A stretch of DNA of 64,000 nt, from the NCBI GenBank assembly GCA_020184695.1, contig JAANOX010000248.1, forward strand, positions 1 to 64,000, given 5' to 3'. Of the stretch, positions 1-15,557 are shown piece by piece; the stretch's first letter is position 1, and each line of letters begins with the position of its first letter. A program made the position numbers and the translations under genes. Origin of the DNA: Histomonas meleagridis 2922-C6/04-290x (taxonomy: Eukaryota; Protista; Parabasalia). Below the pieces are notes generated by a model, which was not told the origin of the DNA, did not search any database, and saw only the letters and a list, made by a program, of their open reading frames with translations.

Positions 1-1
1 T

Positions 2-676
2 TTAGGCATTATTGATAGATTCATGCGAACAATAAGAGATATGAATACTCCAACGGAAAAATCTAAACATCAATCACATGATGAAAAAAACACATTTATT
101 ACTCCAGAAAGAATGAAAAAGTTTCTGAATATTTATAATAATACTTACCATTCAGCCATCGGTTGTTCTCCAAAAGAAATGTTTGATAATAAAGATTTAG
201 AAAAAGAATATATATTTAAATGTTTAGAATCTTCTGAAAAACAAAAATGTATTAAGAATTTAATTCTTCCTGTTGGCTCTTTTGTACGCTATATATTACC
301 GCGTCATAATGGCATAACTAAGAAAAGATTTCAAATCAGCCGTGAATGTTATAAAATTGATGAACGGAAAGGAAATATGTACGTTTTAATTGCTCAAGAC
401 GGAACAGTAATTACTAAACCAAGATACAAACTAATACCTATTGGTAAGAATAAACCAAATAATATTAAATGGGCGTCAACTATTCCTGGTAAATGGGTTG
501 GTTCTGTTGAGTCAATTTTGTCATTTAATCCTAAAACAAATAAGTATAAAGTACTTTTTACCGTTCCTGGGCAACGTTCATATCAAGATGAAATTCCTGC
601 TTCATTTCTCCGCGGTAATACTCCTCATAAACAGTCAGAAATTGAAAGAGAATTTTTTGAAAATAAACGGACATGA
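2..676 (+). CDS. Maverick/Polinton-type retroviral-like integrase, 3' part (ORF enters from outside the window)
   Basis: The frame is open from base 2: LGIIDRFMRTIRD is the helix carrying the third catalytic acidic residue. It is followed by YNNTYHSAIGCSP (integrase YN..HS.IG..P motif), an SH3-like segment, and a C-terminal chromodomain-like segment (VESILSF...KYKVLF). Confidence 0.75.
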   Translation, partial: LGIIDRFMRTIRDMNTPTEKSKHQSHDEKNTFITPERMKKFLNIYNNTYHSAIGCSPKEMFDNKDLEKEYIFKCLESSEKQKCIKNLILPVGSFVRYILPRHNGITKKRFQISRECYKIDERKGNMYVLIAQDGTVITKPRYKLIPIGKNKPNNIKWASTIPGKWVGSVESILSFNPKTNKYKVLFTVPGQRSYQDEIPASFLRGNTPHKQSEIEREFFENKRT

Positions 677-679
677 CAA

Positions 680-702
680 ACTAACTAACTAACTAACCTA
701 AC
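680..702 (+). repeat. (ACTA)n microsatellite just downstream of the integrase stop
   Basis: actaactaactaactaacctaac seen directly. Confidence 0.8.
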
Positions 703-832
703 AAAAAAAATTCGAGAAAGACTTTTCATAAATGGCAGTTTCTGGCAATCATCAATTTTCAACTTAGCGATTTGAGCTGAATTTTGCATGTTTACTGCTG
801 CTGCTAACGATTAATTGACCGAAGAATTTTTA

Positions 833-898
833 ATGCTACCTGATAACTTGATATACCAGGTAGTTACCAGGTAATATTGCGATTAGCTAAAGGAAATT
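833..898 (+). repeat. Left terminal inverted repeat (66 bp perfect core, iterated TACCAGGT/TACCTG motifs)
   Basis: ATGCTACCTGATAAC...GCTAAAGGAAATT; reverse-complement copies at 2379-2444 and 2604-2669. Confidence 0.95.
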
Positions 899-1039
899 CA
901 AAAATTGTTCTGTGAGTTTCTCCGTTCATGCGAAATCACTTGAAAATCAAGAGTTTGCAGCAGTAAATGCCAAAATGAAATTAAGATTAAATTTTAAAGT
1001 AGTTTTTTATTTTTTTAACAAGTATAAAAAGAAGCGAAC

Positions 1040-2283
1040 ATGAGCATTGTTAATTTTACATGCACAAAAGATCCAAAAACATGTATTGTTACTTATAAAA
1101 CCGAAGAACAAATTCAAAAATACATTGACGGCAAAATTAATAAATATGTTGCTGAGCATAAAGAAGAAGTAAAAAGAACTTATTATTTAAAGAAAGAACA
1201 CACGAAGGAAGATTATGATAAGATTTTAGATGAGATAGAATATAATATGCATCACATCCCGGAGAAATGGCTAAAACCTGAAAACGAATTTATAACTGAA
1301 GATATGATCAAAGAACAATATAAAAAAACAAGCTCAAGAAGAATATCAACTTGATTTAAATGACATGAAAAAAGCGAAAAACTTCCAGAAATTTTTAATT
1401 CAAGAAAGAAAGAAATTAGAAAAATATCCTCGTTGTAATCAAAACGTCATTGACAATTTGACAGAATACATAAACCAAACCGTTAATTATTACCATCAAG
1501 ATTTAATTGATGAGTATTTCGAATTGTTCGTAAATAAAGTCAAAAACATTTGTCCGAAGGATAAAGATTATTCCAAAACAATTGAAAGCGTTTATATAAA
1601 CAAGAATGGAAAGCGAGCGATGCAAATTCTTGATAAATTTTCACAAAAATTAATTAATGCTTTAACTACAATTACATTTACGGTAAAAAATAATAAAACT
1701 TCTGAATTTATGCTAATTGAAACAGTACTGAAAAATAAATTCAATAGATTAATTGATATTATGTATATGTTTATATCAAATTACATCAAAAAACAAATAG
1801 ACATTATTCCTGACGCTCATGAAATGTCGAATTCAAAATTAGTAAAAACATATGCTGAAACTTTAATGTTTCGTTTAAATGAATCACTCACAGAAAATCT
1901 TCCTGAACTTTTGAACGAAGAATTTAAGGAAAGAGTTAATTATCTCAAAGAAGATTTAATAGCAACTAAATCATTTGCCGGAGCATTAAATTATGAAGAT
2001 AAACAAAAACCAACGGATCCATTAGTTGAAGAGGTTGAGGAAGATATAGATAATAATTCAGTAATTGTAATTCAAGATTCAAAACCAACGTTTGAGAATT
2101 TCTTAAAAACTCTTCCGGAAAATAAAATTGAAGTAAAAGAATTATGCTCAATGTATAATAATTATTTTAACACTAACGTTTCAACAATAGGATTTGGAAA
2201 AATTGAAAAATGTAAAAGATAATTTAACAAAAATTATTACTGTATCAAGAAATAAGAAAACTACATATTATCAGAAGATTTAA
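1040..2283 (+). pseudogene. Orphan ~413-aa helical protein gene broken by two +1 frameshifts (joins track ORFs 1040..1354 and 1365..2222)
   Basis: Removing one A from the A7 run at 1322-1328 gives YKK-QAQEEYQLDLNDMKKAK, fusing the two ORFs. Removing one A at 2198-2202 gives GFGKLKNVKDNLTKIITVSRNKKTTYYQKI*, which stops at 2283 next to the right TIR. Confidence 0.7.
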
Positions 2284-2314
2284 GGCTTTTATTAAAGTTT
2301 ATTTTTGTCATTTA

Positions 2315-2675
2315 CTCCCGTAAACTCACGATTTTCACGTCATTTCACAAGATTTGAGAAACTCACATAACAATATTAAATTTCCTTTAGCTAATCGCAA
2401 TATTACCTGGTAACTACCTGGTATATCAAGTTATCAGGTAGCATAGAATTAACATCAAAATACTAAAATCCACATAGGATTAACATCAAAACACAACATT
2501 CGACATAGAATTTACAACTCATCCGTTATAGTTAGCAGCTCCCGTAAACTCACGATTTTTCACGTCATTTCACAAGATTTGAGAAACTCACATAACAATA
2601 TTAAATTTCCTTTAGCTAATCGCAATATTACCTGGTAACTACCTGGTATATCAAGTTATCAGGTAGCATAGAATT
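2315..2675 (+). repeat. Direct duplication of the right TIR (2315-2450 and 2539-2675) with short CATAG(A/G/T)ATT subrepeats between and after
   Basis: The two ~136-bp copies differ only by one T in a T-run. Confidence 0.95.
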
Positions 2676-2839
2676 TACAACTTTCCACATAGTATTAACA
2701 ACAACTCAGCCGGATTCATGCATCACACATTTAAAAAATAAATGTCATCATGAATTTAAATATATTTAATTACTTTCAATCAAAACCAACCGATTTATGA
2801 TAATTCAATCGCGTTTACACCGTTCATCCTTTAGTTTAT

Positions 2840-3385
2840 GTAGCGCGAGTGGGAGCGAGTGCGTAGCACGAAGCTCACATAGCGCTGTGTGTGTGTGGTA
2901 TTCAGGCGGAAAACGGTTTTCTTTTTGTGAAGTACAAAAATACGTTTTAGTCACAGGTTTAAGCATTTATAAAAATAAAGTTTGCCATGCGACCAAACAA
3001 TATAACCGTCGCTTTTTGACTACAAACCTCTAACCAAAGATAAATTGAATGAAATAAATGTCCGGCCAAACATAATGGGGGACAATTTGTGCTGGCTATA
3101 CGAGGTTTTTGATAGGTTTATGCGAAAAGTGGCATAAAAAGTGCTATCGTCCCTATGAAAAAGTTTCGCGTTCTCTCAAAATTGAATGCTCATTCAAATT
3201 TTCTATCGAATTGTATGGCTCACAAAAATCATTTTGATTTTTGTTGCGAGCGGAGCGAGCACACTCGAAGGATTGAAGGGGTCTGAGACCTTCGGAGGGG
3301 TCCGAAGGGCACCTCCGGGGGTCGAAGACCCCGGAAATCCCCCAGTGAAAAGTAAAGGTCGGGAATGATCACGTGATCACGTAAA
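2840..3385. other. GC-rich non-coding hairpin/palindrome cluster, probably a mobile-element terminus or origin region
   Basis: GAGC-GTGC-GTA-GCAC-GAA-GCTC at 2853-2876; GCGAGCGGAGCGAGC at 3246-3260; CCTTCGGA-GGGG-TCCGAAGG at 3289-3308; TCCGGGGGTC-GAA-GACCCCGGA at 3314-3335; palindrome TGATCACGTGATCA at 3366-3379. Confidence 0.55.
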
Positions 3386-3620
3386 GCAGTTGATAGTGCT
3401 CCTCACGCTGGCGCAGAAGTTATCATTCGATGGATGAAGAAGAATGGATTACAAATTGATTGAAAATATTTTCGTTGTGTAAAAATTAATTTTTCGATTT
3501 ATATAAATTTAAATTTATATTAGTATCTATTCCTGGTACTGAAATAACCGATAAGTTTTTAGGGGTTCAATTAAATTATGCTATTACTTATTAATAAAAA
3601 ATTTTCCCACTGTTATTTTT

Positions 3621-4267
3621 ATGTTTGATCCACATCGTATAGGACCTATTAGTGAATCATATTATTCACGCAATAAGGGACGTGTCTTACAACGTAAGTT
3701 GGTACCACCTATTAATCCTCCTCTTACTAAATATGATTTAGATCGTGCTTATGAAGTTCTTAAGAACAATGGCAGGATTCCTGATTATTCTATTCAAGAT
3801 ACCATTGTTAATTATCCTGGTGGTACTAGTACTAAAAGAGTTGCCTATGAAATTGGATCTACTATTAAGGTTAATATACCAATATTTTCTATTTCCATTT
3901 CAGATGTTCCAGGTTTTTATTCCTTTGACTAATTTTTTTCTTTAAATACTTCTACACCATTACCATCAATAGATGGTACTCATTATTATGTTTTAATTGT
4001 TATTGAACCCAATTCTCCTCTCAATCTAATTATACAGAGATATATGTTAATTATCTACATCAATCTTCACTTTCTAGATCAGGTACTTATTATTATTATT
4101 TATATGATTTTGGTACTACTTTTCCTTCACTTAATGATCGTACAGTTGGTTTTTTTACATCTGATAATTCTCTTGTATTTTATATTCGTGAAACTAATTT
4201 TGAAGTATCTGCACCAAGTGTTTTAATTGTTCCTAATTTTAATTATTCATTTAATTTACCATTGTAA
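3621..4267 (+). pseudogene. Putative capsid/structural protein (~214 aa), disrupted
   Basis: The ORF continues past an in-frame TAA (3930-3932) as FFSLNTSTPLPSIDGTHYYVLIVIEPNSP. It then shifts frame near 4020 to QSNYTEIYVNY...VPNFNYSFNLPL* (stop 4265-4267). Composition is Tyr/Phe/Val/Ser/Thr-rich and beta-like, the N-terminus is mildly basic, and it is convergent with Rep. Capsid identity is inferred, not recognised. Confidence 0.45.
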
Positions 4268-4309
4268 AATGTAAACCATTCAATTGATTTTTAGATATTT
4301 TCTTTTTAT

Positions 4310-4634
4310 CTATCGGTTTTTCTGGTTAATTTTATTTTTTTCTTTTCGACTCAGCACATAAGTGATAATAACAAAGTTTGTTCACTCTATGGGCAATTGA
4401 GAACTTTTTTCTTTTTTTCTTTTTCTTTAAACCAAGGTACCCCCTCCCCCAAAGAGAGCCCTAATGGCGAATGAGTGCATTTATCACAAACCTGCCGAAG
4501 CCCGACTCCGCGGAGCACTTTTTTTATAAAAGGGCGTAGACAGGTGATCAGTATAAAGTGTACTAGGGGTGGGGGTTAGGTTTAATTTTATTTTTCAAAA
4601 GACCGTTATTTGAGGACGTTTAAAAATAAAAATA
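4310..4634 (+). repeat. Common-region-like direct repeat, copy 1
   Basis: Aligns to 5932-6265. The core 4451-4575 vs 6078-6202 is 125 bp with one substitution. Confidence 0.95.
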
Positions 4635-4708
4635 ATTTTTGCTAGGCCTTCATCTTGCGGAGGACGTTAGTGGTACCTGAGCAAGATTATATTACCTAGC
4701 AAAAATTA
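4633..4708 (+). promoter_or_regulatory. Candidate rolling-circle origin stem-loop
   Basis: 14-bp arms TAATTTTTGCTAGG/CCTAGCAAAAATTA plus inner 7-bp arms ATCTTGC/GCAAGAT. The loop contains TAGTGGTAC (4668-4676; 7/9 match to TAGTATTAC). It is flanked by inverted GACCGTTAT/ATAACGGTC repeats. Confidence 0.5.
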
Positions 4709-5125
4709 CAAGAAATTGCTCATAACGGTCGCCCGATAACCTGAATTGAATACTTTATTTTCTATATTCAATTCATTTTGATCGTCAACCGTCACCAAAA
4801 AAAATTGCTCATAACGGTCTCCAATGACGGTTATTTTTCTATTTTGGGGTACCTTAAAAGCAATTTAAGGGTTATTCTTTTCAATATGTGTCAGGTACCT
4901 GGAAATTTATTTTTAGGTTGACTACATTAATTGTGTGTTTTTATATGTGTCATTTTATACTTTATTCTTATTTTATATTAGTAAATATGATGTTTTTCAC
5001 ATGACATGTCCTTTCTGTCACTTTTCTATTATATAATAATATTTCAATACTTTACATTTAGAAATTGTAATTTGATGTTTTTATTCTTATTTGTATCTCA
5101 GTTATTTAGGAAAAAATATCTTTGT

Positions 5126-5350
5126 TTAATTATTGTTTATTAGTACATATTGTATTTTTATTGCTTCCGTTATTTTTCCCTCTATTGTTAATTTTACAAC
5201 ATAATCGATTATTGCATCATCACAATTTGTGTCTGTATAGTCCACCCATCCTTCAGTTCCATCTTTCCATTGTATTTTAACCCTTGCTTCATATTCTTAT
5301 ATTATTATAAAGTTTAGTACTTGTTCTACTTCGTACTCTTTGTATTCCAT
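5126..5350 (-). pseudogene. Stand-alone chromodomain-like micro-protein (74 codons, one internal TAA at 5297-5299); absent from the ORF track
   Basis: Manual translation: MEYKEYEVEQVLNFIII*EYEARVKIQWKDGTEGWVDYTDTNCDDAIIDYVVKLTIEGKITEAIKIQYVLINNN*. This matches the chromodomain pattern YEVE.IL....VKW.....W.....NC...I..Y. An initiator-like TCATTTT lies just upstream of the ATG. Confidence 0.65.
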
Positions 5351-5585
5351 CTAATAAAATGACACTATTTTTCTCTTCTTTGGTCATTCGACTTTTTGAA
5401 ATATTTAAATTCTATAATTATACTTTTGTGGCAAAGTTATGATGTGTTCCATTCAATGTTATACTCCATTTGGCATCATATTATCTTATCCACTTTTTCA
5501 ATGATGATTATATTGTCACTTTTCTTGTAAACCATTCAATTGATATTAGTAAATATGATGTTTTTCACATGACATGTCCTTTTTG

Positions 5586-5781
5586 TCACTTTTTCATTTT
5601 CTTAATTGCCAATAGTAATTTAATTAAGACTGTTTGATTTTTTATATAACTTATTTCTCTTTAGTAAAGTATTCAAGGAATGGAATCAGTAAACAATCTA
5701 AGCTCTTACAATCGATGGTTTGACAGTTATTTTCACCTAGTTATTTGACATATCTTTTTTATTTTTAACGATAACTGACAT
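5586..5781 (-). pseudogene. Small decayed accessory ORF (~65 aa)
   Basis: MSVIVKNKKDMSNN / GENNCQTIDCKSLDCLLIPFLEYFTKE / KLYKNQTVLIKLLLAIKKMKK* across two frame changes. The stop falls in the repeated module B. Confidence 0.3.
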
Positions 5782-5931
5782 ATTTAAAATTTTTGAATTT
5801 ATTGTGACATTTGTAATTTTATTCAATTTTTATCGTACGTAGTTAAATTTGCTTTTTTTGATGTGTTTTTGACATTTTTTCAATTAATTTTTTTAATTTG
5901 ATGTTTAGTCAGTTGTAAAAACATTTCTTTT

Positions 5932-6265
5932 CTATCGGTTTTTTCGATATAACTTTTTTTCTTTTTGACTATGCACATGAGTGATAATAACAAAGTTTGT
6001 TCGCTCAATGGGCTATTAAATTTTCTATTTTAATTTTTCTTTATTTTATAAAATTAATCCCCCACCCCCTCCCCCCCAAAGAGAGCCCTAATGGCGAATG
6101 AGTGCATTTATCACAAACCTGCCGTAGCCCGACTCCGCGGAGCACTTTTTTTATAAAAGGGCGTAGACAGGTGATCAGTATAAAGTGTACTAGGGGTGGG
6201 GGTCAGGTTTAAATATTTTTAATTCAATTTCGACCGTTATTCGAGTACGTTTAAAAATAAAAATA
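5932..6265 (+). repeat. Common-region-like direct repeat, copy 2 (ends 30 bp from the Rep stop)
   Basis: Aligns to 4310-4634 and contains the 10-bp inverted pair CCCCCACCCC (6059-6068)/GGGGTGGGGG (6193-6202). Confidence 0.95.
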
Positions 6266-6294
6266 TTGGCTCTTTATTGAGTCAAATGAATTGA

Positions 6295-7290
6295 TTACTG
6301 GATCATTTCAAAAGTTACGTTAGACTGTAGGAATAAATCGTCAGTTGCCAATATTTGCACTTCTTTAAATCTACGTTTTAGAGCTTGAATATCTTCATCC
6401 GAAGCATTTTGGAAGCATTCATCAATACTGTGATTACTAGTTATAATTAGTCTAAATGTACCAGGATAAATTACCATAGATCCTCCTTTTATTTCACCCA
6501 AAAATGGATATCTGTCTGCCCAAATTTTTATATGCTGAGTTAATGCATCCCCTTTCCAAGGGAAGTCATCTATACAGACAATTTTATGATCATTCAATAT
6601 ATAACCGTCCCACCACTTATTAAATGCCTTAGGGTATATTTCTAGTGGTGAAACTTGGTGGACCCATTTAGATTTTCCAATTCCTGCTTTACCAAAAATC
6701 CATAAATTTTTTATTTGTAAATCTCCGTTATAAGTTCCTCTAGTTGCAACATTTCTTAACATTGAATCTCTTCTAACTGATAGAATTTGATTTCGATGAA
6801 GAATCATTTGTTTAGGATATTTAGCATCTAATTCTTCAATTGACAATTCCTTTATATCTTTCATCATTTGCCCATAAAAATCATCTTCTCCTAATCTTTT
6901 TTCAACTGTTGCAGGTAATTTACCATCTTCAAAATAATTATTTTCCTTTCTACAATAACGAATATTAGAATCCTCTGTACCCTTTGCAACTTCTAGATAA
7001 AAATTATTAAAACCTAATTTAGCGTATATTGATTGTTTTCTCATTCTCTTTTTTAAATGGAAATAACATTGAAGGTGTGGAGTTTGAGTAGTTGGTGCAA
7101 TTTCCTTTCCTACTATTCCATATCTGCACCACATTGTTATAAATATCTTGACACTGTTATACTGATCATCAGAATAATTGTTAATAGTTGCAATCCATCT
7201 TTGAGCTTCTGGGTTAACCTGATTAATTTGTAACTCACCAATATCTCTTCTCCTGACTGCTTCTAGTGCTTCAACACTTCTTTTAGCCAT
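6295..7290 (-). CDS. rep: CRESS-DNA virus replication-associated protein (HUH endonuclease + SF3 helicase)
   Basis: RCR motif I ATINN, motif II PHLQCY, motif III YCRK, Walker A GKAGIGKS, KWWDGY, Walker B IDDF, motif C ITSN and arginine finger ALKRRF are all in order. Confidence 0.95.
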   Translation of the reverse strand: MAKRSVEALEAVRRRDIGELQINQVNPEAQRWIATINNYSDDQYNSVKIFITMWCRYGIVGKEIAPTTQTPHLQCYFHLKKRMRKQSIYAKLGFNNFYLEVAKGTEDSNIRYCRKENNYFEDGKLPATVEKRLGEDDFYGQMMKDIKELSIEELDAKYPKQMILHRNQILSVRRDSMLRNVATRGTYNGDLQIKNLWIFGKAGIGKSKWVHQVSPLEIYPKAFNKWWDGYILNDHKIVCIDDFPWKGDALTQHIKIWADRYPFLGEIKGGSMVIYPGTFRLIITSNHSIDECFQNASDEDIQALKRRFKEVQILATDDLFLQSNVTFEMIQ

Positions 7291-8465
7291 CTAATTGGAC
7301 AAATGGTTCTGCCAAATTGTGGCATTTATTTCCAAAATTTTGACATTTTTTTCAAATTTATTTATGCCACTACTTTTTCAAATAAAGTATTCAATTGACA
7401 TAATGTAAATATCAAAGATATTTCATATCATATGTCAAAAGCAAGTTCCTAACTTGACACTATGTGGGAATATTCATTTGTGGAACTTATTGGATAATAA
7501 AAAATAAAATGTGAACATGACTCAAATAAGTATTGAAGCAAAGCTGACTGATGGTTAATTTATATATATGCTTTCATCTTTATTTCATGAGATTTGTTTT
7601 TTTGCCTTAAGATATTTATGCCATTATGAAATGCTATTAAAACTTGAAATTAATGTCTAACGATAGGAGGTAATTTTACATTGCTAGAAATAAACCTTAA
7701 ATACACTCTGTACGTAATTTTTATCTCATGAAATGTTGCATTAATATAATTTGTTGCAATGCTTATCTTTATCACAATCAATGAATTTTGAGATTTTATT
7801 GGTTTTTTACACAAATGAAGTTTTTTTTAGACAATTTCGATTAAAAATATATATTTCGAAAAGAGTTCTGATTGTTAGCAAACTTATTTTCCTTTTACTG
7901 CAGGTATTGTTATAAAAATTATAATGAATTTTTTTTGATATAGTGTTCCGTATGTTAAAATTTATAAATATAAGTTAACTTGGGATTTAGATAAAAAAAA
8001 ATACCTAGAAATAGCTTGATGTAAATCTTGTATTGGACCTCTATAGATTTAAAAACCGATACTTTCTATATTAAGGATGAAAATGAATTCTATTAACATA
8101 ATACAAGTGTTCTTTTAATTCTAATAAAGGAAGAACAATTATCAATATAATTTCGATATGTTAAGCAATATTGTGATGAAATTTGAAATCCTTATCTCAT
8201 TATTCAAGAAAGATTCCACAATTATATATTGCCTTATATATTAAAAATACTAATTAACAATACTAATAATTTAATTCTGAATGTTATGATGGTTTGGCTT
8301 GAGTCCAAAATACATTAAATCTTAAAAAAAAAAATTACTTCAAAATCATAAATTTGTTAACAAAAAGAATTTCTCTAAATTGTTTTTCAGCATAAAAAAG
8401 ACAAAAGGATTAAAATTAAATTCATTTCAAAATTTTTCATGCAAATTTTCAGTTAAACTTAGACT

Positions 8466-9353
8466 TTACTTAGGAAGGATTGGTTTAAGCTGTGGGTGAT
8501 CAGCATGTGCATATGATTGTTGTGTTCCAATGCCTTGAACAGAAATTGAAGCACAAATGCATGCGAATTTTGCAGCTTCTTCATATCCCATTCCCATTGA
8601 AATGCAATATGAAAATGATCCAAGAAATGAGTCACCAGCGCCAGTGGTATCAATTGCGTTGACCTTTGGACTTGCTACGTGGATTTTCTCTTTGTCTTTT
8701 TGGTATAAATCAGCACCATCACTTCCAAGTGTGACAACAACGAGTTGAACTCCATACCCAAATAACTCATCGACGTTACCCAATGCTTCAAGCTCGACCT
8801 TGTTGACAATGGCAATTGTAACATTTTTGAAGATGTTTTTGTCTAAATTTGCTGGAATTGGTGCTGCATTTAAAATTGTTGTGGATCCACCTTCATGCGC
8901 AATCTTAAGAGCTTCAGCAGTAACTTCAACAGGCATTTCAAAGTTTGTAACCAGATATTTGCTTTTGCTGAGCTTTTCGGAATTTTGGATTATCATTTCT
9001 TTAGTTGGATTGCATGGGTGAATAACAATAGCAGACTCACCCTTGTCAAGGACAAAGCAGATTGCTAATCCTGTTGGTACATTGTCTAATGTTTGAACCA
9101 TTTCATTATTGATATTGATTTTATTGAAATAAAAGAGAATTTCTTTCCCATCAGAATCGTTACCAACGCATGTTAAAAGCGATGGTTTATGGGATTCTCC
9201 TGCAAGAAAAGCATATTGTGCACATGCATTAGAAGCTTTTCCTCCATAACCTCTATTTAGTTCATTTCCTTTTAATGTTTCACCAAGGTTTGGAAGTCGA
9301 TCGCATTTAGAATATAGGTCGATACTGCAAATACCAGCGAATACAGTTGTCAT
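8466..9353 (-). CDS. rbsK: Ribokinase (PfkB family)
   Basis: RLPNLGETL, GGKASN, NFEMP, NAAP, NKVE and the PfkB signature DTTGAGDSF. Confidence 0.92.
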   Translation of the reverse strand: MTTVFAGICSIDLYSKCDRLPNLGETLKGNELNRGYGGKASNACAQYAFLAGESHKPSLLTCVGNDSDGKEILFYFNKININNEMVQTLDNVPTGLAICFVLDKGESAIVIHPCNPTKEMIIQNSEKLSKSKYLVTNFEMPVEVTAEALKIAHEGGSTTILNAAPIPANLDKNIFKNVTIAIVNKVELEALGNVDELFGYGVQLVVVTLGSDGADLYQKDKEKIHVASPKVNAIDTTGAGDSFLGSFSYCISMGMGYEEAAKFACICASISVQGIGTQQSYAHADHPQLKPILPK

Positions 9354-9609
9354 CCCAATGTGTCTTAACGGCCTTCTTCATCGTTTTTTTATATTCAAAG
9401 TGAAATGACTTAACGTCTCGCATCATTTTGCCAAGTCTCAAAATTCCTTGTGTTCGATTGGTATTACCAATGAACATATGGCAGAGATTTTATGCATCAA
9501 AAGCATTCGGTTTGTGCATTAGTTTAATCTAAAGACGCACAATTTTACATTAGTTATTATTTGCAGAAAATTAGTTTTTGACAAAATGTAAAAACCCTAA
9601 AGAAAATAC

Positions 9610-10830
9610 TTAGTTTAATGTTATATAAAACTCACCATAATTTTCACCGGTTGTCATCCAGACTTGTCCAGTTCCAAGGTTCACTAATTCTCCCCAATCA
9701 GCTGTTGATGCCTCTGACTGCATCAGTTCCATCAGTAGTATTGTGTTCTCTGGTTGATAGTCCCCTCTGCAAAATATCGGATAACCACCCAAATATGTTT
9801 TCATCTTTTTTTCTAATTCTTTGGTATACTTTGTGTTTAAGATTTTACCAATGAAGTACTTATCTACTTTGTCTAATTCATAATCCAAATTTATGCTATC
9901 TGAACTAAGTGGATACATTTCAACTTTTTCCCAACCAGTAACAACTCTACTTTCGTTTAAAACATATTTATGATCAACTTCACCATAAGTTATTTGGTCA
10001 ATTTCTTCTTTGTGATATAAACATGCAAAGCAATCTTCATATAATTCATTGCAATACAAACATCCATATCCTACAAGAACAGAGTCACGATCTTCCTCAG
10101 GAAACAGTGCTTGGATATCGTCAGGAAGATTCTTTATATATAATGAGAAAATAGGAGAGAAATTGTTTTGGCACTTTTTGCATATGTGGTCTTGTTTTGT
10201 AGCTAAAAAAGGCATTTTCCCTCCAAATTTAGAAACACGAGGATCTGTTGAATCCACGTGTTCAACGATTGGGATGTAAGCATTTCGGATAGATGATTCA
10301 ACAATTTTTGCTGCTTTAGTCCTTTCTACATTGATTTGAGATATTAAATCTGGATAAATGGGTTCAATGATATCACTCAATTGGTCAATTAAAGGCATGA
10401 ATTCTTTAGAAACTTTCTTTCCAGAAAATTGTTCAAAGAAATCAGAAACTTTCATACCAATTGGTAAATCTTCTATATTACGGATAAAGGCAGCAATATC
10501 GTAGGCACTATAGTAAGGAACATCATTTCCTTCTTTCATGCAAAAAGAAATAAGTGCGTTCCTTGCTTCTGGGGTTTTGATTATAATGGAAATAGAATGA
10601 GCAAAAAGCCCATTGAAACCAGAATATCTACCTATGCTGAAAGATTTTTGTATAAGGAAGTTGAGTGCTTCTTCATCTATATTACAATTCTTTTGATAAA
10701 TTTCTAATTCTTTGTAATATTTTTCTATGCCACGTTTTCTTTCTTCTTTATCTGCGTTCCAAAGTGCGAGTTCTTGTTCCATTTTCTTGATGCAATTCAT
10801 GACTTCGTCCGGAATTCCCTGTGGCTGCAT
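9610..10830 (-). CDS. Hypothetical protein with a C-terminal YwqG/DUF1963-like domain
   Basis: SKFGGKMPF, CxxC, LGGYP and the terminal WG...GTGQVW pattern; 406-aa ORF. Confidence 0.6.
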   Translation of the reverse strand: MQPQGIPDEVMNCIKKMEQELALWNADKEERKRGIEKYYKELEIYQKNCNIDEEALNFLIQKSFSIGRYSGFNGLFAHSISIIIKTPEARNALISFCMKEGNDVPYYSAYDIAAFIRNIEDLPIGMKVSDFFEQFSGKKVSKEFMPLIDQLSDIIEPIYPDLISQINVERTKAAKIVESSIRNAYIPIVEHVDSTDPRVSKFGGKMPFLATKQDHICKKCQNNFSPIFSLYIKNLPDDIQALFPEEDRDSVLVGYGCLYCNELYEDCFACLYHKEEIDQITYGEVDHKYVLNESRVVTGWEKVEMYPLSSDSINLDYELDKVDKYFIGKILNTKYTKELEKKMKTYLGGYPIFCRGDYQPENTILLMELMQSEASTADWGELVNLGTGQVWMTTGENYGEFYITLN

Positions 10831-10956
10831 AACAAAAAAGTGAACTCACATCCTTGACGCTGTACAGCGTTTATTTGAAAAAGTTGGAAATTACGGAATA
10901 AACGTTTTTTCGCATTGGTCATTTCTTGATAATGTTTCATTTCACATGTCTTACAC

Positions 10957-12207
10957 ATGAGCAATGAAAATATTAAATTATACTTAAAAACACTATTAAA
11001 ACAAAAAAAGATAAGAATTTTGATAACAGGACCAGCATTATGCGGGAAAACAGAAACGATTTTATCAGTCCTTCAAGAAATAAGAACTTATGAACAAAAT
11101 TTCGATTATGTTTATCTTTCAGCAAATGAGTTATATGGAAATCCACGAATTTCACCTGCTTCAATTATTGAACGTCACATTCGTGAAGATAAACTTCTTT
11201 TCATTGATGCTATTGAAACTCTTTTTCCATCTATAGATGTTGATTATAATTTTTTATATCGATTAATTTCCAAAAAACCAAGGTTAATTGCAGCATGTCG
11301 TTCTTCTTCCAATGTTCATCCCTTTTTACTACGTTATTTCCAACACACATTAGAAATGATTCAACCACCAACCAAAGAAAATACGAATCTCATTCCCAAA
11401 ATCACTTTTGAAGACATTGGTGGTGCAACCCGCGCCAAAGAACTTGTTCTTATGATGACATCATGGTGTGTTACCAATTCCGAAAAAGTATCAAATTGGG
11501 GTTTAACATCTCCAAGCGGCGCCATTCTCTATGGGCCACCAGGCACAGGTAAAACCCTACTTGCTAAGGCTGCTGCCAACTCATGTCATTGTCGATTTTA
11601 TTCGATTGCTATTCCAGATCTTCTTCGCTGTGAAGTCGGCGAAAGTGAGAAGCGACTTACGCGTGTATTCGAATGCGCGCGTGCTGACTCGCCATCCATT
11701 GTATTCATTGATGAGATACAAGCGCTTTTTGGTCGCAGGAATGAGAGAAGAGCCGATTCCAATCGACTTGTCGTACATTTAATTGCACAACTTGACTTAA
11801 ATGCTAAGCATGGAGCAGTGTTTTGTCTCGCCGCAACGAATGCTCTTGAGGCAGTTGACCCGGCGCTGTTACAGCCCGGAAGATTTGAGGAAATAATTGA
11901 GATATCATATCCATCGAAAGAGGACAGGAAAAGTGTGTTCGGAATTGCAATGAAAGAAATAAAACATGAGAATAATGTGGAGGATAACTTGGAAATGCTG
12001 GCTGACATGACCGACGGATTCACGGCATCGGATATCACAGGCGTGTGCCAAAAGGCAGCTATAACTGCTTTGATGAATGGCAAAGAAATGGTCTGCTTCG
12101 ATGATGTTAGGAACGAAATACAAAATAGTATCTTTACAAGAGCAAGAACAGGAAACTTACCAATTATGGAGAGGTTTAAGTATAGCGAAAAAAATAATTT
12201 ATTTTGA
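10957..12207 (+). CDS. CDC48/AFG2-like AAA+ ATPase (degenerate first module, intact second module)
   Basis: TFEDIGG, GPPGTGKT, FIDEI, ATN...VDPALLQPGRF, DGFTASDI; first P-loop GPALCGKT. Confidence 0.88.
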   Translation: MSNENIKLYLKTLLKQKKIRILITGPALCGKTETILSVLQEIRTYEQNFDYVYLSANELYGNPRISPASIIERHIREDKLLFIDAIETLFPSIDVDYNFLYRLISKKPRLIAACRSSSNVHPFLLRYFQHTLEMIQPPTKENTNLIPKITFEDIGGATRAKELVLMMTSWCVTNSEKVSNWGLTSPSGAILYGPPGTGKTLLAKAAANSCHCRFYSIAIPDLLRCEVGESEKRLTRVFECARADSPSIVFIDEIQALFGRRNERRADSNRLVVHLIAQLDLNAKHGAVFCLAATNALEAVDPALLQPGRFEEIIEISYPSKEDRKSVFGIAMKEIKHENNVEDNLEMLADMTDGFTASDITGVCQKAAITALMNGKEMVCFDDVRNEIQNSIFTRARTGNLPIMERFKYSEKNNLF

Positions 12208-12519
12208 TAAAGAATAAATATTATTAATAAATGAAATATTTGATTAAACTTAAGAAATTTAAGCTATTGGATTAAAGAGAATTATTATCGATGGAAAGAA
12301 AGTTTATTATTTATGCCATGGCATTTTTCAAAAATGATAATCTCATTATAAAAAATTTATTTTAAGCTAAATGAAAGAAAATATACTATAAGTAAAATGC
12401 ATTAGAGTTTAAAAACATTTCGAATTGAAATGATTCTCTACTTCAAACGATGATGCAATTCCACTTTTTGCTTGTTACCGTATTTGAATAATGTATTCGA
12501 TGAAAAAAGTGTCAAATAG

Positions 12520-14010
12520 ATGTCGATTTTGAGCGATGATTCTTTTTTCAAGCAAATTTTCAATAACAGGACAGCACCTTTGATACAATTTCGTGTTCGC
12601 GTTTCACAGTTAATAAAGATTACAGGAGCTAATCAACCTCTCGGACCTTACATGCTGAGTTTTATGCCAACATCAAATGGCATAAGCTTTACTTTGCAAA
12701 ACTCAGGCGGCCCGGCACTCGTGTCTTTCCTTATTAAGCCCAGTTTTTCATTTAGTTTAGATGAAAATAATAATTGGAATATAACGAATCAAAATAAACA
12801 ATGGAAACTCGAATTCATAAATGAAAAGGAAAGAATAAAAGCAGAGGCTGTGTTGGGTTTTTTATTATCATTTAAAAACCAAAACAGCATTTCAACTTTT
12901 GATGTTAAGTTAAATAATGAAGATGAGAAAATTCAGATAAATGACAAAGTTGAAATGAATTGTTATGGTTTTTCATTTTCTGATTTTCCTTATATAGACA
13001 AACTTTCTATAAATCGAGAATCATTTTCATCATATATAACACCACAAAACCTCGGAAATTCATTATCAAACGGAATCTGCGGCATGACCCATGGTTCAAC
13101 TCGTATCATATATGTTCCTGAACAATTATACGATTCAGATAAACTCCTTCCAAATCCAGATGGTCCAATTGTTTTTCATATTACTTTAGTGCATGTAAAA
13201 TATAATCGCAGCAGTTCTGGTGATTCACCTAAATCCGCCAAACCAGTCAAACCACCAGTTGAAGATCCAAAGCCAATCATTGAAAACGACAATAAACAAG
13301 AAAAAATTGATAAACTTAAAAAGGTTGGCGCTCTTCCATCAGCCATGGCTGTTCCCAACAAACCAGCTAATAATGAAAAGCCTAAAGATCCAGAGCCACC
13401 ACATGTAACAATTGAGACACCAAAGCCAACACCAACTCCTGCTACATCCTCTTCTACATCTGCTTCCGCATCTCAATCTAACCAAGATCTCTCTCGACGC
13501 ATTTCCTCTCTTGAGCAAACGATAGATTCAATTTTCAATAAAGTGAACGTTAACAGAACCGTTAACTCCAATGAAGTCATCAAAGAGATAACGAATTATT
13601 CAGCTCGTCTTCAGAAGCAACAAGCTGAGCTTGATTCACTACACAAGCAATTACAAGAACAGAAAGCAAAACAATCCGGAAACAATGTTGCGAAGCAACA
13701 ACAAGATAAAGCGAAACAATTTTTGGATACTGTAACGCGTAAAAAGACACAAATTGATGCGGAACTTAAAGACTCAGAGTTCGAATTAAGACTTTTGGAG
13801 AAGTCAGCAGTCGAAAACTCTGATAAAGTTAAAGCTAAAGCAAAGGACTATGTGAAGATGCTTATGAATGCAGTTTTCGACGGAATGAATGAAACGTTCG
13901 ATGAAAATAAGAAATATTCTGGCGACGAAGTGTCGAAGCAATTATTTAACTTGCTACGAAAGCATTCGTTCGAAGTGATGGATGAGATTGACTCAAATTC
14001 TTTCTTCTAA
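12520..14010 (+). CDS. FKBP15/WAFL-like protein (WH1/PH-like N-terminus, divergent FKBP domain, Pro-rich linker, coiled coil)
   Basis: FKBP-like GICGMTHGSTRIIYVPE...IVFHITLVHVK. The C-terminal VKMLMNAVF..MNETF...KYSG resembles the FKBP15 tail as recalled. Confidence 0.6.
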   Translation: MSILSDDSFFKQIFNNRTAPLIQFRVRVSQLIKITGANQPLGPYMLSFMPTSNGISFTLQNSGGPALVSFLIKPSFSFSLDENNNWNITNQNKQWKLEFINEKERIKAEAVLGFLLSFKNQNSISTFDVKLNNEDEKIQINDKVEMNCYGFSFSDFPYIDKLSINRESFSSYITPQNLGNSLSNGICGMTHGSTRIIYVPEQLYDSDKLLPNPDGPIVFHITLVHVKYNRSSSGDSPKSAKPVKPPVEDPKPIIENDNKQEKIDKLKKVGALPSAMAVPNKPANNEKPKDPEPPHVTIETPKPTPTPATSSSTSASASQSNQDLSRRISSLEQTIDSIFNKVNVNRTVNSNEVIKEITNYSARLQKQQAELDSLHKQLQEQKAKQSGNNVAKQQQDKAKQFLDTVTRKKTQIDAELKDSEFELRLLEKSAVENSDKVKAKAKDYVKMLMNAVFDGMNETFDENKKYSGDEVSKQLFNLLRKHSFEVMDEIDSNSFF

Positions 14011-14529
14011 ATTTAAAGTTAGGAATTAATCTGTTTTTTAAAAATGTATACTCTTTTGAGATTGTTTTGATATTTATATGAATATTCTTTGTGAATCTTA
14101 ATAAATATATTGTTAAATAGCATTTGATATTTCCCATTTTAAACTGATGATTTGAGTGAATTCTTAAATGGCTTTATCAAATGATATAAATAAATATGAT
14201 ATTTCAATGAAAATAACCCAATTTATGAACAATTTAAGAACAGTGTGGCAAGAAGAAACTTTTTGAAAGAAATGACGCTCACTGTTGTAATCTTGACAAA
14301 AAGTGGAGTTTTGATACCAATTCAATAAAATCTATTGAAAATAATCGATTTTTCTGTGAGTTCCATTGAAAATTTTATTGGTATTTAGAGCCGATGTTCA
14401 TTCTTCACAATTGGCAGAAAGGATTGTGTACGGACCTTTTGACGTCAAACCATAGACCATTGAAATCCTTTCAAAAGTCATTACAAAAAAATTATTGAAT
14501 CGAAATTCATTTTACAACATTGCTTCGGA

Positions 14530-15435
14530 ATGTGTTTCAGCTTTGAGAATGATGATTTTGTATGGGATGAAGAAAGGATTGATCAAACCAAGGTTCCTGT
14601 TCCCACCTTAAATCCACAAGATATTTTCTCCTTTGAAAATGAAAATTTTGATTTTATTTTTTCAATCAATCCAGAAATAGAGAATTCATCTCTAAAAACA
14701 AAAAAGATCAAAAATACCAGTAGTGGTATCATTTCTCCAGATAAGAACAATGAATTCCAAAAAGACTTATATCATCAAAAATATCCATTCGTCCCTTTTC
14801 AAATTTCAACAACTCTTGGTATATCAGAAATATTCAACCAACTCCATAATGAGAATATTCCAAGAAGATTGTGTAAGAAAACTCTTCCAATTCCAAAATT
14901 TAATATTGCAGAAAATACCGGCTTTAATTCACTTTGCACAGATCCAAATATAAAGGTCAATCCATTCAAGCTTGGTTTCATTCCATATAATTATTGGAAA
15001 GATGAGGAAATAACGTTTGGTGATTTAGTTCATGACTTTTTCCAACGTAAAAATAGTACAAACAGTAGGTTTTTTTACAAATTATATAACGCGCTCAAAA
15101 TTGTTGACGATGATCCGTTTTATTCTGATATTATAGGAATAGAATGGTTCACTGAAAGGATCATAAAAGTCACAAAACTTGTATTTGCGCGACTTCTTGG
15201 TATCAAAACAATTGATGGCTCATTGTTTCATCAACAAGGCAATTTCCCATCGCATGGATTTGTCGAACTTGGTTCTCAAGAGGCGTTGAAATATGTGAAG
15301 CAATCAGAACTTCAAGGAATAGATTTTGATAAAGTTCGACTTCTAATTCATCAAGACGGATCTTTCGTGAGAGGATCTATGGAGAGCTCTATTGATTGTT
15401 GCAAGTGGAAAAGCATAAAGAATAGAATAAAATAG
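14530..15435 (+). CDS. Trichomonad-expanded putative DNA-binding protein (initiator-binding-domain/HSF-like winged helix)
   Basis: RFFYKLYNALKI...GIEW...FARLLGIKTIDGSLFHQQGNFPSHGFVEL, a block recalled from an expanded trichomonad family. Confidence 0.55.
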   Translation: MCFSFENDDFVWDEERIDQTKVPVPTLNPQDIFSFENENFDFIFSINPEIENSSLKTKKIKNTSSGIISPDKNNEFQKDLYHQKYPFVPFQISTTLGISEIFNQLHNENIPRRLCKKTLPIPKFNIAENTGFNSLCTDPNIKVNPFKLGFIPYNYWKDEEITFGDLVHDFFQRKNSTNSRFFYKLYNALKIVDDDPFYSDIIGIEWFTERIIKVTKLVFARLLGIKTIDGSLFHQQGNFPSHGFVELGSQEALKYVKQSELQGIDFDKVRLLIHQDGSFVRGSMESSIDCCKWKSIKNRIK

Positions 15436-15557
15436 ATTTCGTTGAGGTTACTTTCCTAATTTTTGCTTTTGTTTTAATATAATTATCCAAATATCACTTT
15501 ATAAAAAGTTATTAATGAGAGAAAAAAACATTGAGTAAATCAAACAATTTGCTTTAT

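What the first reader, a model, noticed from the sequence alone, without database searches (positions are those of the whole stretch)
3480..7400. Endogenous CRESS-DNA virus-like cassette with Rep, putative capsid, a chromodomain micro-gene and a duplicated common region, embedded in a Maverick-associated island
Seen: an intact HUH+SF3 Rep (minus strand), a convergent decayed beta-rich ORF, two small minus-strand accessory ORFs (one a chromodomain), a 330-bp non-coding region present twice, and a stem-loop with iteron-like repeats. Known: CRESS viruses replicate by rolling circle; multipartite nanoviruses and bipartite geminiviruses share a common region among components; parabasalids have been proposed as hosts of kirkoviruses, whose genomes are ~4 kb with several ORFs. 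Inference: this is either a whole ~3.9-kb kirkovirus-like genome or an integrated concatemer of several circles sharing a common region, i.e. a multi-component protist ssDNA virus or a Rep-mobilised gene-cassette system. Carrying a chromatin-reader domain would be unusual for such an element.
Basis: partly seen in the sequence, partly recalled or inferred. Interest (0 to 1): 0.92.

Follow-up and report, generated by a model that had tools for sequence, protein, structure and literature searches.

The report
Composite kirkovirus fossil in Histomonas genome
This is a patchwork of pieces of small circular DNA viruses (kirkoviruses) lodged in a chromosome of the poultry parasite Histomonas meleagridis, a kind of viral fossil already reported for this genome, with one unreported extra: a tiny chromodomain gene wedged between the viral pieces.

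Summary
The window is the first 64 kb of a Histomonas meleagridis contig. There is an intact 331-aa HUH+SF3 Rep, a convergent ORF, a ~340-bp non-coding region present twice, and a strong hairpin with flanking direct repeats. The Rep's best named relative belongs to Kirkoviridae. Kirkovirus fossils in exactly these assemblies were published in 2022.

The "common region" is not shared between genome components. It is the normal non-coding element that lies between the last ORF and the origin hairpin in single-circle relatives from human gut. The hairpin is the kirkovirus-type origin.

The cassette (3522-7479) is a head-to-tail composite of at least two diverged, deleted genomes:
- One piece has the ORF, the region, the origin and the iterons.
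- The other has the region, Rep and the upstream block, and has lost its origin.

Between them sits a unit of a small gene family. Intact relatives of that gene elsewhere in the genome are HP1-like chromodomains. The window's own copy is broken and unrecognisable alone.

The convergent ORF differs from an intact 213-aa copy in the sister assembly only by three frameshifting indels, which may be assembly errors. No Maverick gene was found. Neither a multipartite virus nor a whole genome is supported.

The parts
3369..3470 (+). Flank: last ~100 nt of a 233-aa host-side gene. It is whole in the sister-assembly copy L094 (9142-9843) and truncated here by the repeat 2900-3373.
3522..3594 (+). Left end of the viral DNA: tail of the second accessory ORF (ORF-B) of a kirkovirus-like unit.
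   Evidence: Homology to L008 3096 onward, which overlaps ORF-B (L008:2626-3165). ORF-B matches L001/L014 ORFs at E 1e-48.
3621..4266 (+). It is broken by 3 frameshifting indels and has 0 substitutions relative to the intact 213-aa P0388.
   Evidence: Its N-terminal region is homologous to the 220-aa last ORF of the circular relative L001 (BLASTP 8e-5, same residues). The fold was not obtained (pLDDT 34).
4299..4640 (+). Non-coding region, copy A. The core at 4440-4575 is closed by a C-rich arm (4440-4450) and a G-rich arm (4566-4575).
   Evidence: The left part and the arms are shared with L001 and 17 human-gut contigs.
4634..4707 (+). Origin-type hairpin: 12-bp perfect stem, inner stem, and the motif ending TATATTAC abutting the 3' arm.
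   Evidence: The same design is found in 68 of 89 related loci. The loop end is identical in L001, L004 and L014.
4710..4822 (+). Iteron-like direct repeats (4710-4733 and 4799-4822) around a palindrome.
   Evidence: The same layout, with other repeat sequences, occurs in L008 and L012, and as a triple repeat in L006.
4972..5030 (+). Repeat D3, copy a (downstream of the micro-gene).
5126..5387 (-). Chromodomain-family micro-gene. It is broken by at least one frameshift and one in-frame stop.
   Evidence: Its flanks are 83-99% identical to those of the intact ORFs L094:11499-11729 (76 aa) and L009:18305-18562 (85 aa). A family profile against PDB gives HP1 at 2.4e-5. Pfam Chromo gives 0.0047 for the L094 copy. 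The window copy alone is not significant.
5540..5598 (+). Repeat D3, copy b, upstream of the micro-gene. Together with the ~20 nt before it, it resembles the conserved block upstream of Rep.
   Evidence: z 4.5-7.7; 0-5 of 2000 shuffles
5599..5878 (.). AT-rich spacer with repeated TTGACA-like motifs. Its origin is unresolved.
5879..5922 (+). Tail of an ORF-C of a second lineage.
   Evidence: Homology of 5879-6267 to L012 10648-11021.
5923..6267 (+). Non-coding region, copy B. It ends where the hairpin should begin, and the origin and iterons are absent.
6295..7290 (-). Rep: HUH endonuclease plus SF3 helicase, intact, 331 aa.
7291..7479 (.). Region upstream of Rep, with a conserved block (about 7370-7479) shared with all paralogous units. 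This is the right end of the viral DNA.

Best explanation
Window 3522-7479 is an endogenous viral element. It is nuclear DNA of Histomonas meleagridis derived from kirkoviruses (Cressdnaviricota, Kirkoviridae), circular ssDNA viruses that infect parabasalids.

It is not one genome. It is a head-to-tail composite of deleted genomes of at least two diverged lineages.
- Piece 1 (3522 to about 4822-4971) holds the tail of ORF-B, ORF-C, the 3' non-coding region, the origin hairpin and the iterons. Its Rep is gone.
- Piece 2 (5879-7479) holds a tail of ORF-C, the 3' non-coding region, Rep and the upstream block. About 190 nt holding its origin hairpin and iterons are gone.

The 'common region' is therefore the same standard cis-element seen twice, because two partial genomes lie side by side.

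Between the pieces sits one unit (4972-5598) of a family of small chromodomain-only genes. Each is preceded by a ~60-nt block that resembles the block upstream of Rep.

Inferred history, not shown:
- Rolling-circle and recombination-dependent replication gave heteromeric concatemers and defective molecules.
- These were joined into the chromosome by illegitimate recombination.
- Later deletions, and exchange between the D3 repeats, changed which micro-gene body is present.

The micro-gene is most likely a captured host chromodomain placed under a virus-type upstream block. I hold this at about even odds against it being cargo of another mobile element or a host gene.

The element as it stands has an intact Rep and one intact origin, but it lacks two of the genes found in all complete relatives.
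For: Host and integration:
- The window is 100% identical to JAANOX010000248.1 positions 1-19353 of GCA_020184695.1.
- Paralogous proteins are named Histomonas meleagridis.
- The host pfkB gene lies on the right on the same contig. HECT and other host genes lie on the left of the sister-assembly copy L094.

Kirkovirus affinity:
- The best representative, P0121 (4.8e-68), is in the 90% cluster of the Irmovirus amras Rep, family Kirkoviridae.
- Direct BLASTP to that Rep gives 39% identity and 7e-79, against 4e-23 for the closest solved Rep structure, a circovirus-type Rep by my own recollection of entry 7lar.

Gene order in complete relatives and in the 3.37-kb tandem units of L007/L008:
- The order is upstream block, ORF-A, ORF-B, ORF-C, non-coding region, hairpin, iterons, Rep on the other strand.

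The region and hairpin are viral cis-elements:
- L001 and 17 human-gut contigs share the left part of the region (79%) and the C and G arms at a fixed spacing.
- The hairpin design is found in 68 of 89 related loci, with differing stems and a constant TATTAC-C end.

Two lineages:
- 3522-4785 is 85-90% identical to units whose Rep is 32-40% identical to the window's Rep.
- The flanks of the two region copies are about 75-80% identical.
- The ORF-C tail beside copy B matches L012, not the ORF-C beside copy A.

Loss of the second origin:
- Copy B ends at the base of the missing hairpin.
- The 28 nt before the Rep stop match the stretch just before the Rep stop in L008, about 190 nt beyond that unit's hairpin.

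Micro-gene.

Prior report of such elements in these assemblies: PMC9615429.
Against: - The total length (3958 nt) is that of a kirkovirus genome, so a single odd recombinant genome is not excluded.
- The 98.6% identity of the 140-nt core between the two copies, against about 75-80% in their flanks, needs either selection before integration or gene conversion afterwards. I could not tell which.
- I could not fetch the sister assembly's copy of the right half, because the tool shows similar places only once. L094 ends inside the cassette and has another left flank than the window. So the window and L094 may be alleles or paralogs, or one contig end may be misjoined.
- No formal Rep phylogeny was made.
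- The micro-gene was not found in any of about 100 exogenous relatives, so its viral provenance is unproven.
- Whether ORF-C is a capsid is untested. The model had pLDDT 34, and there are no Pfam or PHROG hits.
Confidence: 0.6

Rival explanations
1. Satellite-like or second component. The 1.63-kb stretch from region copy A to copy B holds the region, origin hairpin, iterons and the micro-gene with its virus-type upstream block. On this reading it is an integrated copy of a Rep-less small circle, replicated in trans by a kirkovirus Rep, that recombined into a helper genome through the shared region.
For: - The spacing of the two copies is 1619-1631 nt. Between them lie exactly one origin, one pair of iterons and one gene with its own upstream block.
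- The core of the region is almost identical in the two copies although their flanks are not.
- The same left half with a different micro-gene body exists in L094.
Against: - A single crossover in the region would leave the helper's own origin after copy B, and it is absent.
- No contig among 83 IMG/VR and 17 metagenome relatives carries a micro-gene or is a ~1.6-kb circle with this region. The three ~1.5-kb contigs show no terminal overlap.
- Relatives with this region are single circles of 3.1-3.9 kb with all genes.
- In L009 the micro-genes lie without the region or a hairpin.
Confidence: 0.12
2. One recombinant kirkovirus genome of about 4 kb was integrated whole. It had lost ORF-A and ORF-B, gained the micro-gene, and carried a duplicated 3' region.
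For: - The length of 3958 nt is in the range of circular relatives, 3.1-4.2 kb.
- The left and right ends (ORF-B tail and upstream block) are neighbours in the circular map, separated only by ORF-A and ORF-B.
Against: - All complete relatives and the 3.37-kb paralogous units keep ORF-A and ORF-B.
- The left module is near-identical to units with a very different Rep.
- The two region copies differ by about 20-25% in their flanks.
- The second copy lacks the hairpin.
Confidence: 0.1
3. The micro-gene unit has nothing to do with the virus. On this reading it is a host gene family, or cargo of the unidentified multi-ORF repeat seen beside these elements, and it landed between two viral fossils by ordinary recombination in a repeat-rich region.
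For: - It is absent from all exogenous relatives examined.
- Chromodomains are cellular domains, and the host has its own (CHD-type gene at 15558-18944).
- In L009 the two intact micro-genes follow a ~6.5-kb block of unassigned ORFs. That block's terminus also lies next to the cassette in the window.
Against: - The ~60 nt upstream of the micro-gene resemble the conserved block upstream of Rep, both in the window and in L009.
- In two loci it lies strictly between viral pieces.
Confidence: 0.35
4. Assembly artefact: free viral reads or collapsed paralogs were stitched onto a contig end.
For: - The cassette lies 3.4 kb from the start of its contig.
- L094, L007 and L008 also lie at contig ends.
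- The window and L094 have different left flanks.
- The indel-only differences in ORF-C look like long-read errors.
Against: - Host genes continue for 56 kb to the right on the same contig.
- Both assemblies carry the left half at 98-100% identity.
- Paralogous units are decayed in different ways.
- The published comparison found EVE-bearing scaffolds homologous between the two assemblies (PMC9615429).
Confidence: 0.06

Closest known systems
Kirkovirus-derived endogenous viral elements of Histomonas meleagridis (Kinsella et al. 2022, PMC9615429)
   Same: Same two assemblies and the same kind of element. That paper counted 104 Rep-like and 41 Cap-like elements, 102 of the Rep-like ones in Kirkoviridae. 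This Rep's nearest named relative is a kirkovirid.
   Different: The paper's main text gives counts and a Rep tree, and its supplementary tables were not available to me. In that main text I found no description of the origin hairpin, the 3' non-coding region, head-to-tail arrays, composite structure or the chromodomain micro-genes.
Exogenous kirkoviruses of the Irmovirus / 'Human fecal virus Jorvi2 and Tarto' group: circular contigs L001, L004, L006, L014, L108
   Same: - Rep is 39-44% identical.
- Gene order is the same.
- The origin hairpin lies between the last ORF and the Rep stop, with an identical loop end.
- L001 and L108 share the 3' non-coding region with its C and G arms.
   Different: Those are single circles of 3.1-4.2 kb with ORF-A, ORF-B and ORF-C, one region and one origin, and no micro-gene. 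The window has two partial sets, no ORF-A or ORF-B, and is chromosomal.
Common regions of multipartite or bipartite CRESS viruses (Nanoviridae, bipartite begomoviruses)
   Same: A non-coding stretch next to the origin occurs more than once and is better conserved than its surroundings.
   Different: In those viruses each component is a separate circle and its common region contains its own origin hairpin (established knowledge). Here the second copy has no hairpin, and the free relatives are single circles.
HP1/Polycomb-type chromodomains (Pfam PF00385)
   Same: - A profile of three intact micro-gene products hits more than 20 solved chromodomains, the best being HP1 at 2.4e-5.
- The L094 copy covers positions 3-52 of the 53-position Pfam model.
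- By eye, on the printed HP1 alignment and from my own knowledge of the three HP1 cage residues, two of the three cage positions are aromatic in the L009 85-aa copy. The L094 copy appears to have aromatic residues at all three (sequences). This was not tested formally.
   Different: - These are stand-alone proteins of 76-105 aa with no chromoshadow or other domain.
- They score below Pfam's gathering threshold (17.3 vs 25.1 bits).
- Copies are only 33-38% identical to each other.
- The window's copy is broken.
Integrated tandem geminivirus-related DNA in plant genomes
   Same: Head-to-tail, partly deleted copies of a Rep-encoding ssDNA virus sit in a host chromosome. This comparison rests on my own knowledge, not on a tool result.
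   Different: Different virus family and host. Here units of diverged lineages are joined.

Membership tests
Kirkoviridae (as the source of the element) | Rep with an HUH endonuclease and an SF3 helicase that groups with kirkovirid Reps | tested here: met
   Domains. Motifs kept. The best of 1.8 billion representatives shares a 90% cluster with the Irmovirus amras Rep. Identity is 39%, E 7e-79. This is similarity only; no tree was built.
Kirkoviridae (as the source of the element) | Circular genome of about 3-4.4 kb with Rep plus 3-5 further ORFs | tested here: not met
   The cassette is chromosomal and lacks ORF-A and nearly all of ORF-B. The feature is met by the relatives L001, L004, L006 and L108 and, apart from circularity, by the 3.37-kb units of L007/L008. 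The window therefore holds fragments, not a genome.
Kirkoviridae (as the source of the element) | Origin hairpin with a nonanucleotide-like motif | tested here: met
   4634-4707: z -5.0. The same design is found in 68 of 89 related loci, and the loop end is identical to L001, L004 and L014.
Kirkoviridae (as the source of the element) | Capsid gene | tested here: inconclusive
   ORF-C is the positional homologue, and in its N-terminal part the sequence homologue, of the last ORF of L001. There are no family hits and the model has pLDDT 34.
Endogenous viral element | Viral DNA contiguous with host genes and present in independent assemblies | tested here: met
   Host genes lie on the right in the window and on the left in L094. 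The left half is 98-100% identical in the second assembly. The right half in the second assembly was not retrieved.
Multipartite CRESS virus with a common region | Each copy of the common region carries its own origin hairpin | tested here: not met
   Copy B ends at the base of the missing hairpin, and the Rep stop follows 28 nt later.
Multipartite CRESS virus with a common region | Free relatives exist as several small circles that share the region | tested here: not met
   Relatives with this region carry Rep and the accessory ORFs on one contig, and L001 and L108 are circular. No small circle was found among 100 contigs. Sampling of poultry viromes is poor, so absence is weak evidence.
Chromodomain (PF00385) | Significant match to the chromodomain profile or to solved chromodomains | tested here: met
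   This holds for the family: PDB profile search 2.4e-5 with more than 20 chromodomain hits, and Pfam 0.0047 for the L094 copy, below the gathering score. The window's own broken copy is not significant.
Chromodomain (PF00385) | Binding of methylated lysine | not testable with these tools
   Only the apparent presence of aromatic residues at cage positions was read off alignments by eye.
Maverick/Polinton context | Protein-primed DNA polymerase B, retroviral-type integrase, double jelly-roll capsid, packaging ATPase, protease | tested here: not met
   No such Pfam hit in any window ORF of 150 aa or more. Unassigned ORFs in the left flank and in L009 gave nothing in Pfam, PHROGs or PDB. Decayed fragments were not searched for.

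The most novel reading that the evidence does not exclude
The 1.63-kb unit between the two copies of the non-coding region holds an origin, iterons, a virus-type upstream block and one chromodomain gene. The most novel reading is that it is the integrated form of a Rep-less satellite-like circle of a protist ssDNA virus. Its only product would be a histone-mark reader, and different copies would carry different chromodomain variants, exchangeable between the D3 repeats.
Probability: 0.1. Interest if true: 0.8.

Novelty: new member of a known kind. Interest (0 to 1): 0.38.

Why it matters
Kirkoviruses are found in faeces of diseased horses, pigs, cattle and children, but they appear to infect gut parabasalids. 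Fossils in Histomonas are the direct evidence for that link, and this is already published.

What this locus adds is anatomy:
- It ties the fossils to free human-gut viruses through shared non-coding elements, namely the origin hairpin and a C/G-clamped 3' region.
- It shows that the fossils are head-to-tail arrays and composites of diverged lineages.
- It turns up a family of fast-diverging chromodomain-only micro-genes nested among them.

If those micro-genes were virus-borne, they would be the first chromatin-reader gene I know of in a CRESS virus. If they are host genes, they may bear on how the parasite packages such repeats. Either way the multipartite reading that gave the finding its high score does not hold.

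Tried and rejected
- Rfam scan of 2500-8500: nothing credible, so the region is not a known RNA gene.
- Canonical NANTATTAC search in the cassette: no match. The motif here is a variant, which I recognised only by comparison with relatives.
- LTR-retrotransposon reading (two ~340-bp direct repeats around a chromodomain): dropped once the repeats proved to be a viral intergenic element.
- tblastn and phmmer of accessory ORFs of L001, L004 and other exogenous contigs against the window: only Rep matches.
- Core of the region as an exact 27-mer in IMG/VR: 0 hits.
- Search for homologues of the 85-aa micro-gene in the 5.8-billion protein set: none. In IMG/VR: none.
- Structure of ORF-C from a six-sequence alignment: pLDDT 34, unusable, so no fold search was run.
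- Consensus fold of the region core: only the invariant C/G closing stem is shared, with no informative covariation.
- Consensus fold of 17 hairpins: the alignment put the 5' arms out of register and gave no structure. I rely on the per-locus perfect stems.
- Retrieving the sister assembly's copy of the right half: the tool collapses similar places.
- Supplementary tables of PMC9615429: not held.

They are not repeated here.

Full report
**Where the window comes from**

Large ORFs across the window are ordinary parabasalid genes. They include an initiator-binding-protein domain (PF10416), BspA-type leucine-rich repeats, saposins, phosphofructokinase, IFT122 and ribosomal proteins. A neighbouring host protein led to contig JAANOX010000248.1 of assembly GCA_020184695.1. 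Its first 19353 bases are 100% identical to the window. Paralogous proteins carry the name Histomonas meleagridis. The paper PMC9615429 names this assembly and its sister GCA_020186115.1 as the two H. meleagridis genomes. In them it counted 145 CRESS-virus fossils: 104 Rep-like, of which 102 fall in Kirkoviridae, and 41 Cap-like.

**Checking the observation**

- **Rep.** ORF 6295-7290 (-) is intact at 331 aa, with Viral_Rep and SF3 helicase domains. It keeps every column that is invariant in an alignment with 15 relatives.
- **Duplicated region.** It is real (E 4e-100) and confined to this cassette within the 64 kb.
- **Hairpin.** The hairpin at 4634-4707 is far more stable than shuffles (z -5.0). 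It is followed by two 24-nt direct repeats around a palindrome.
- **Convergent ORF.** The + strand reading 3621-4266 is in pieces.
- **Small minus-strand ORFs.** These are pieces of one broken gene.
- **Maverick context.** No Maverick hallmark was found in any ORF of 150 aa or more.

**What the Rep is**

About 12000 representatives match at E up to 0.001. The best is P0121 at 4.8e-68 and 41% identity. Its 90% cluster contains the Rep of Irmovirus amras, a species of Kirkoviridae. The direct comparison gives 39% identity and 7e-79. The closest solved Rep gives only 4e-23. Other close clusters hold 'Human fecal virus Tarto' and 'Jorvi2'. The best hits sit on contigs of 3.4-4.4 kb. L001, L004 and L006 have terminal overlaps, so they are circles.

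**The other copies in the same genome**

The 103-aa piece of the convergent ORF has Histomonas paralogs. Fetching their loci and comparing DNA gave the following map.

- In L007 and L008, both at contig ends, a 3.37-kb unit is repeated head to tail.
- Its order is: conserved upstream block, ORF-A (~150 aa), ORF-B (170-180 aa), ORF-C (213 aa when intact), non-coding region, hairpin, iterons, and Rep on the other strand.
- ORF-A, ORF-B and Rep of these units match ORFs of the circular relatives L001 and L014, at up to 1e-48 and 7e-87.
- Intact ORF-C (P0388) matches the last ORF of L001 over the same N-terminal residues (8e-5).

The window's 3522-4785 is 85-90% identical in DNA to these units. 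Their Reps, however, are only 32-40% identical in protein to the window's Rep. The window's homology to any unit starts at 3522, inside the tail of ORF-B, and ends at 7479, at the end of the upstream block.

**The 'common region' and the hairpin are standard kirkovirus cis-elements**

I oriented the relatives like the window and read the stretch between the last ORF and the Rep stop. L001 shows the same left part of the region, the same C-rich and G-rich arms, and then a hairpin whose loop ends in the same motif abutting the 3' arm. L004 has the same loop end. L006 has the canonical TAGTATTAC followed by a triple direct repeat. A simple search for this design (motif, then an arm with a perfect partner of 9 nt or more upstream) finds it in 68 of 89 related loci. 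The stems differ from locus to locus. By chance about 4 in 10000 motifs would qualify. The exact 16-mer of the loop end recurs in L014.

A gapped pattern of the two arms found 17 metagenome contigs, those named being from human gut. All have the same 113-nt spacing, and 12 carry a Rep or a Rep fragment. One of them, L108, is circular at 3.1 kb. They share the left 160 nt of the region at 79% identity. Their interior between the arms differs from that of the Histomonas copies, and only the closing stem is common.

So the region occurs once per genome in single-circle viruses. I take the hairpin next to it to be the origin, by its likeness to the origin hairpins of other CRESS viruses. No test of function was made.

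**Why there are two copies here**

- Copy B stops exactly where the hairpin of copy A begins. The Rep stop follows 28 nt later.
- Those 28 nt match the stretch just before the Rep stop in L008's second unit, about 190 nt beyond that unit's hairpin. The second origin and its iterons have therefore been lost.
- To the left of copy B only about 44 nt of an ORF-C tail remain. They resemble L012's copy, not the ORF-C beside copy A.
- The flanks of the two copies are about 75-80% identical, while a 140-nt core is 98.6% identical. The same excess conservation of the core is seen against L008 and L009, but not against L007. This points to constraint on the core before integration, or to gene conversion afterwards. 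I cannot tell which.

Together this describes two partial genomes of different lineages lying head to tail. It does not describe components of one virus.

**The micro-gene**

- The segment 4972-5676 matches L009 18013-18730 at 83-91% identity.
- In L009 an intact 85-aa ORF sits at that place, and a second ORF of 105 aa lies 460 nt downstream.
- In L094, the sister assembly's copy of the window's left half, an intact 76-aa ORF sits at the same place.
- Single sequences give weak chromodomain hits: HP1 at 0.56 and Pfam Chromo at 0.0047 for the L094 copy.
- A two-sequence profile gives HP1 at 4.6e-4, with 26 of 27 hits being chromodomains. A three-sequence profile gives 2.4e-5.
- The family is therefore a divergent, stand-alone chromodomain.

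The window's own copy is broken by at least one frameshift and one stop, and alone it is not significant. Its identity rests on position and on its first dozen residues.

The flanks of the window and L094 copies are 98-100% identical, yet the ~205-nt body cannot be aligned. The substitutions between the two loci cluster around the D3 repeats. This fits exchange or alternative deletion between D3 copies of an array, which is an inference.

The ~60 nt upstream of the micro-gene resemble the conserved block upstream of Rep (z 4.5-7.7; alignment). No micro-gene was found in 83 IMG/VR or 17 metagenome relatives, nor in the large protein set.

**State of ORF-C**

Against L094 the window has no substitution from 3621 to 4971 and three indels. 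All three indels lie in ORF-C, all shift the frame, and two touch runs of five or more identical bases. In a long-read assembly of a multi-copy repeat this may be error rather than decay. Whether ORF-C is the capsid remains open.

**Context and caveats**

- The left flanks of the window and of L094 differ. L094 has host genes, including a 233-aa gene whose last 100 nt are all that remain in the window (3369-3470). In the window that gene is cut by a repeat (2900-3373), which also lies beside kirkovirus fragments in L009 and L012.
- L094's contig ends inside the cassette. I could not retrieve the second assembly's copy of the right half.
- Alleles, paralogs or a misjoined contig end therefore all remain possible for the left 3.4 kb. 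The viral DNA itself is continuous with 56 kb of host genes to the right.

**Verdict**

The kirkovirus reading is right, but this kind of element is already known for this genome. The multipartite, whole-genome and Maverick readings are not supported. The new points are:
- the shared origin and 3' region;
- the composite head-to-tail build;
- the chromodomain micro-gene family, whose provenance is open.

Noticed in passing
window 833-975, 2303-2444, 2546-2669; ORFs 1040-1354 and 1365-2222: 143-bp inverted repeats (88% identical) flank two ORFs with no Pfam or PHROG hit. This is a terminal-inverted-repeat-like unit of about 1.6 kb. 2315-2489 and 2539-2704 form a tandem duplicate (91%).
   Followed up: partly
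window 2900-3373; L009 10970-11400; L012 13117-13592 and 4994-5028: A repeat with a G+C-rich, palindrome-bearing end lies directly beside kirkovirus fragments in three loci, reversed in two of them. In the window it truncates a 233-aa gene that is whole in L094. It may be the terminus of an unidentified mobile element.
   Followed up: partly
window 23-676; L008 4667-5041; L009 14221-14607: A 217-aa ORF family with no known domain recurs next to the viral arrays, at 60% and 29% aa identity.
   Followed up: no
L007 1-10749; L008 1-4700: Head-to-tail arrays of a 3.37-kb kirkovirus-like unit, at least three units in L007, lie at contig ends. The units are decayed in different ways, and one Rep reading of 319 aa is stop-free.
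   Followed up: partly
L026 (IMG/VR, 7889 nt); also L025, L034, L036, L020, L030, L035, L046: Viral contigs hold two diverged kirkovirus-like units (76-91% identical); most show a Rep match and a hairpin in both, though the second Rep match is cut short by the contig end in L020 and L046. L026 closes on itself with a 79-nt overlap. These are either real heterodimers or assembly chimeras through conserved stretches. They parallel the composite fossil.
   Followed up: partly
L108-L124 (17 metagenome contigs, those named from human gut): All share the left part of the 3' region and the C and G arms at an identical 113-nt spacing. In the seven that I aligned, the interior is identical among them and different from the Histomonas copies. 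They are probably one virus of a human gut parabasalid.
   Followed up: partly
window about 7396-7440; L007 about 2290-2335: The conserved block upstream of Rep holds an inverted repeat. By eye its arms differ between the window and L007 while pairing is kept. It may be a regulatory hairpin distinct from the origin.
   Followed up: no
IMG/VR loci L020-L042 vs L001, L004, L006, L014 and the window: In the more distant relatives (Rep 31-35% identical) the origin hairpin lies just upstream of Rep. In the closest relatives and in the window it lies downstream of Rep. These are two layouts within kirkovirus-like genomes.
   Followed up: no
window 15558-18944 (-): A host SNF2/CHD-type ATPase with chromodomains (Chromo, 2e-14) lies 8 kb from the cassette. 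The micro-gene profile does not detect it.
   Followed up: yes
window 6295-7290: The exact 331-aa Rep is absent from the protein collection, although neighbouring host proteins and the 103-aa ORF-C piece are present. The intact Rep gene therefore appears to be unannotated in the public record.
   Followed up: partly
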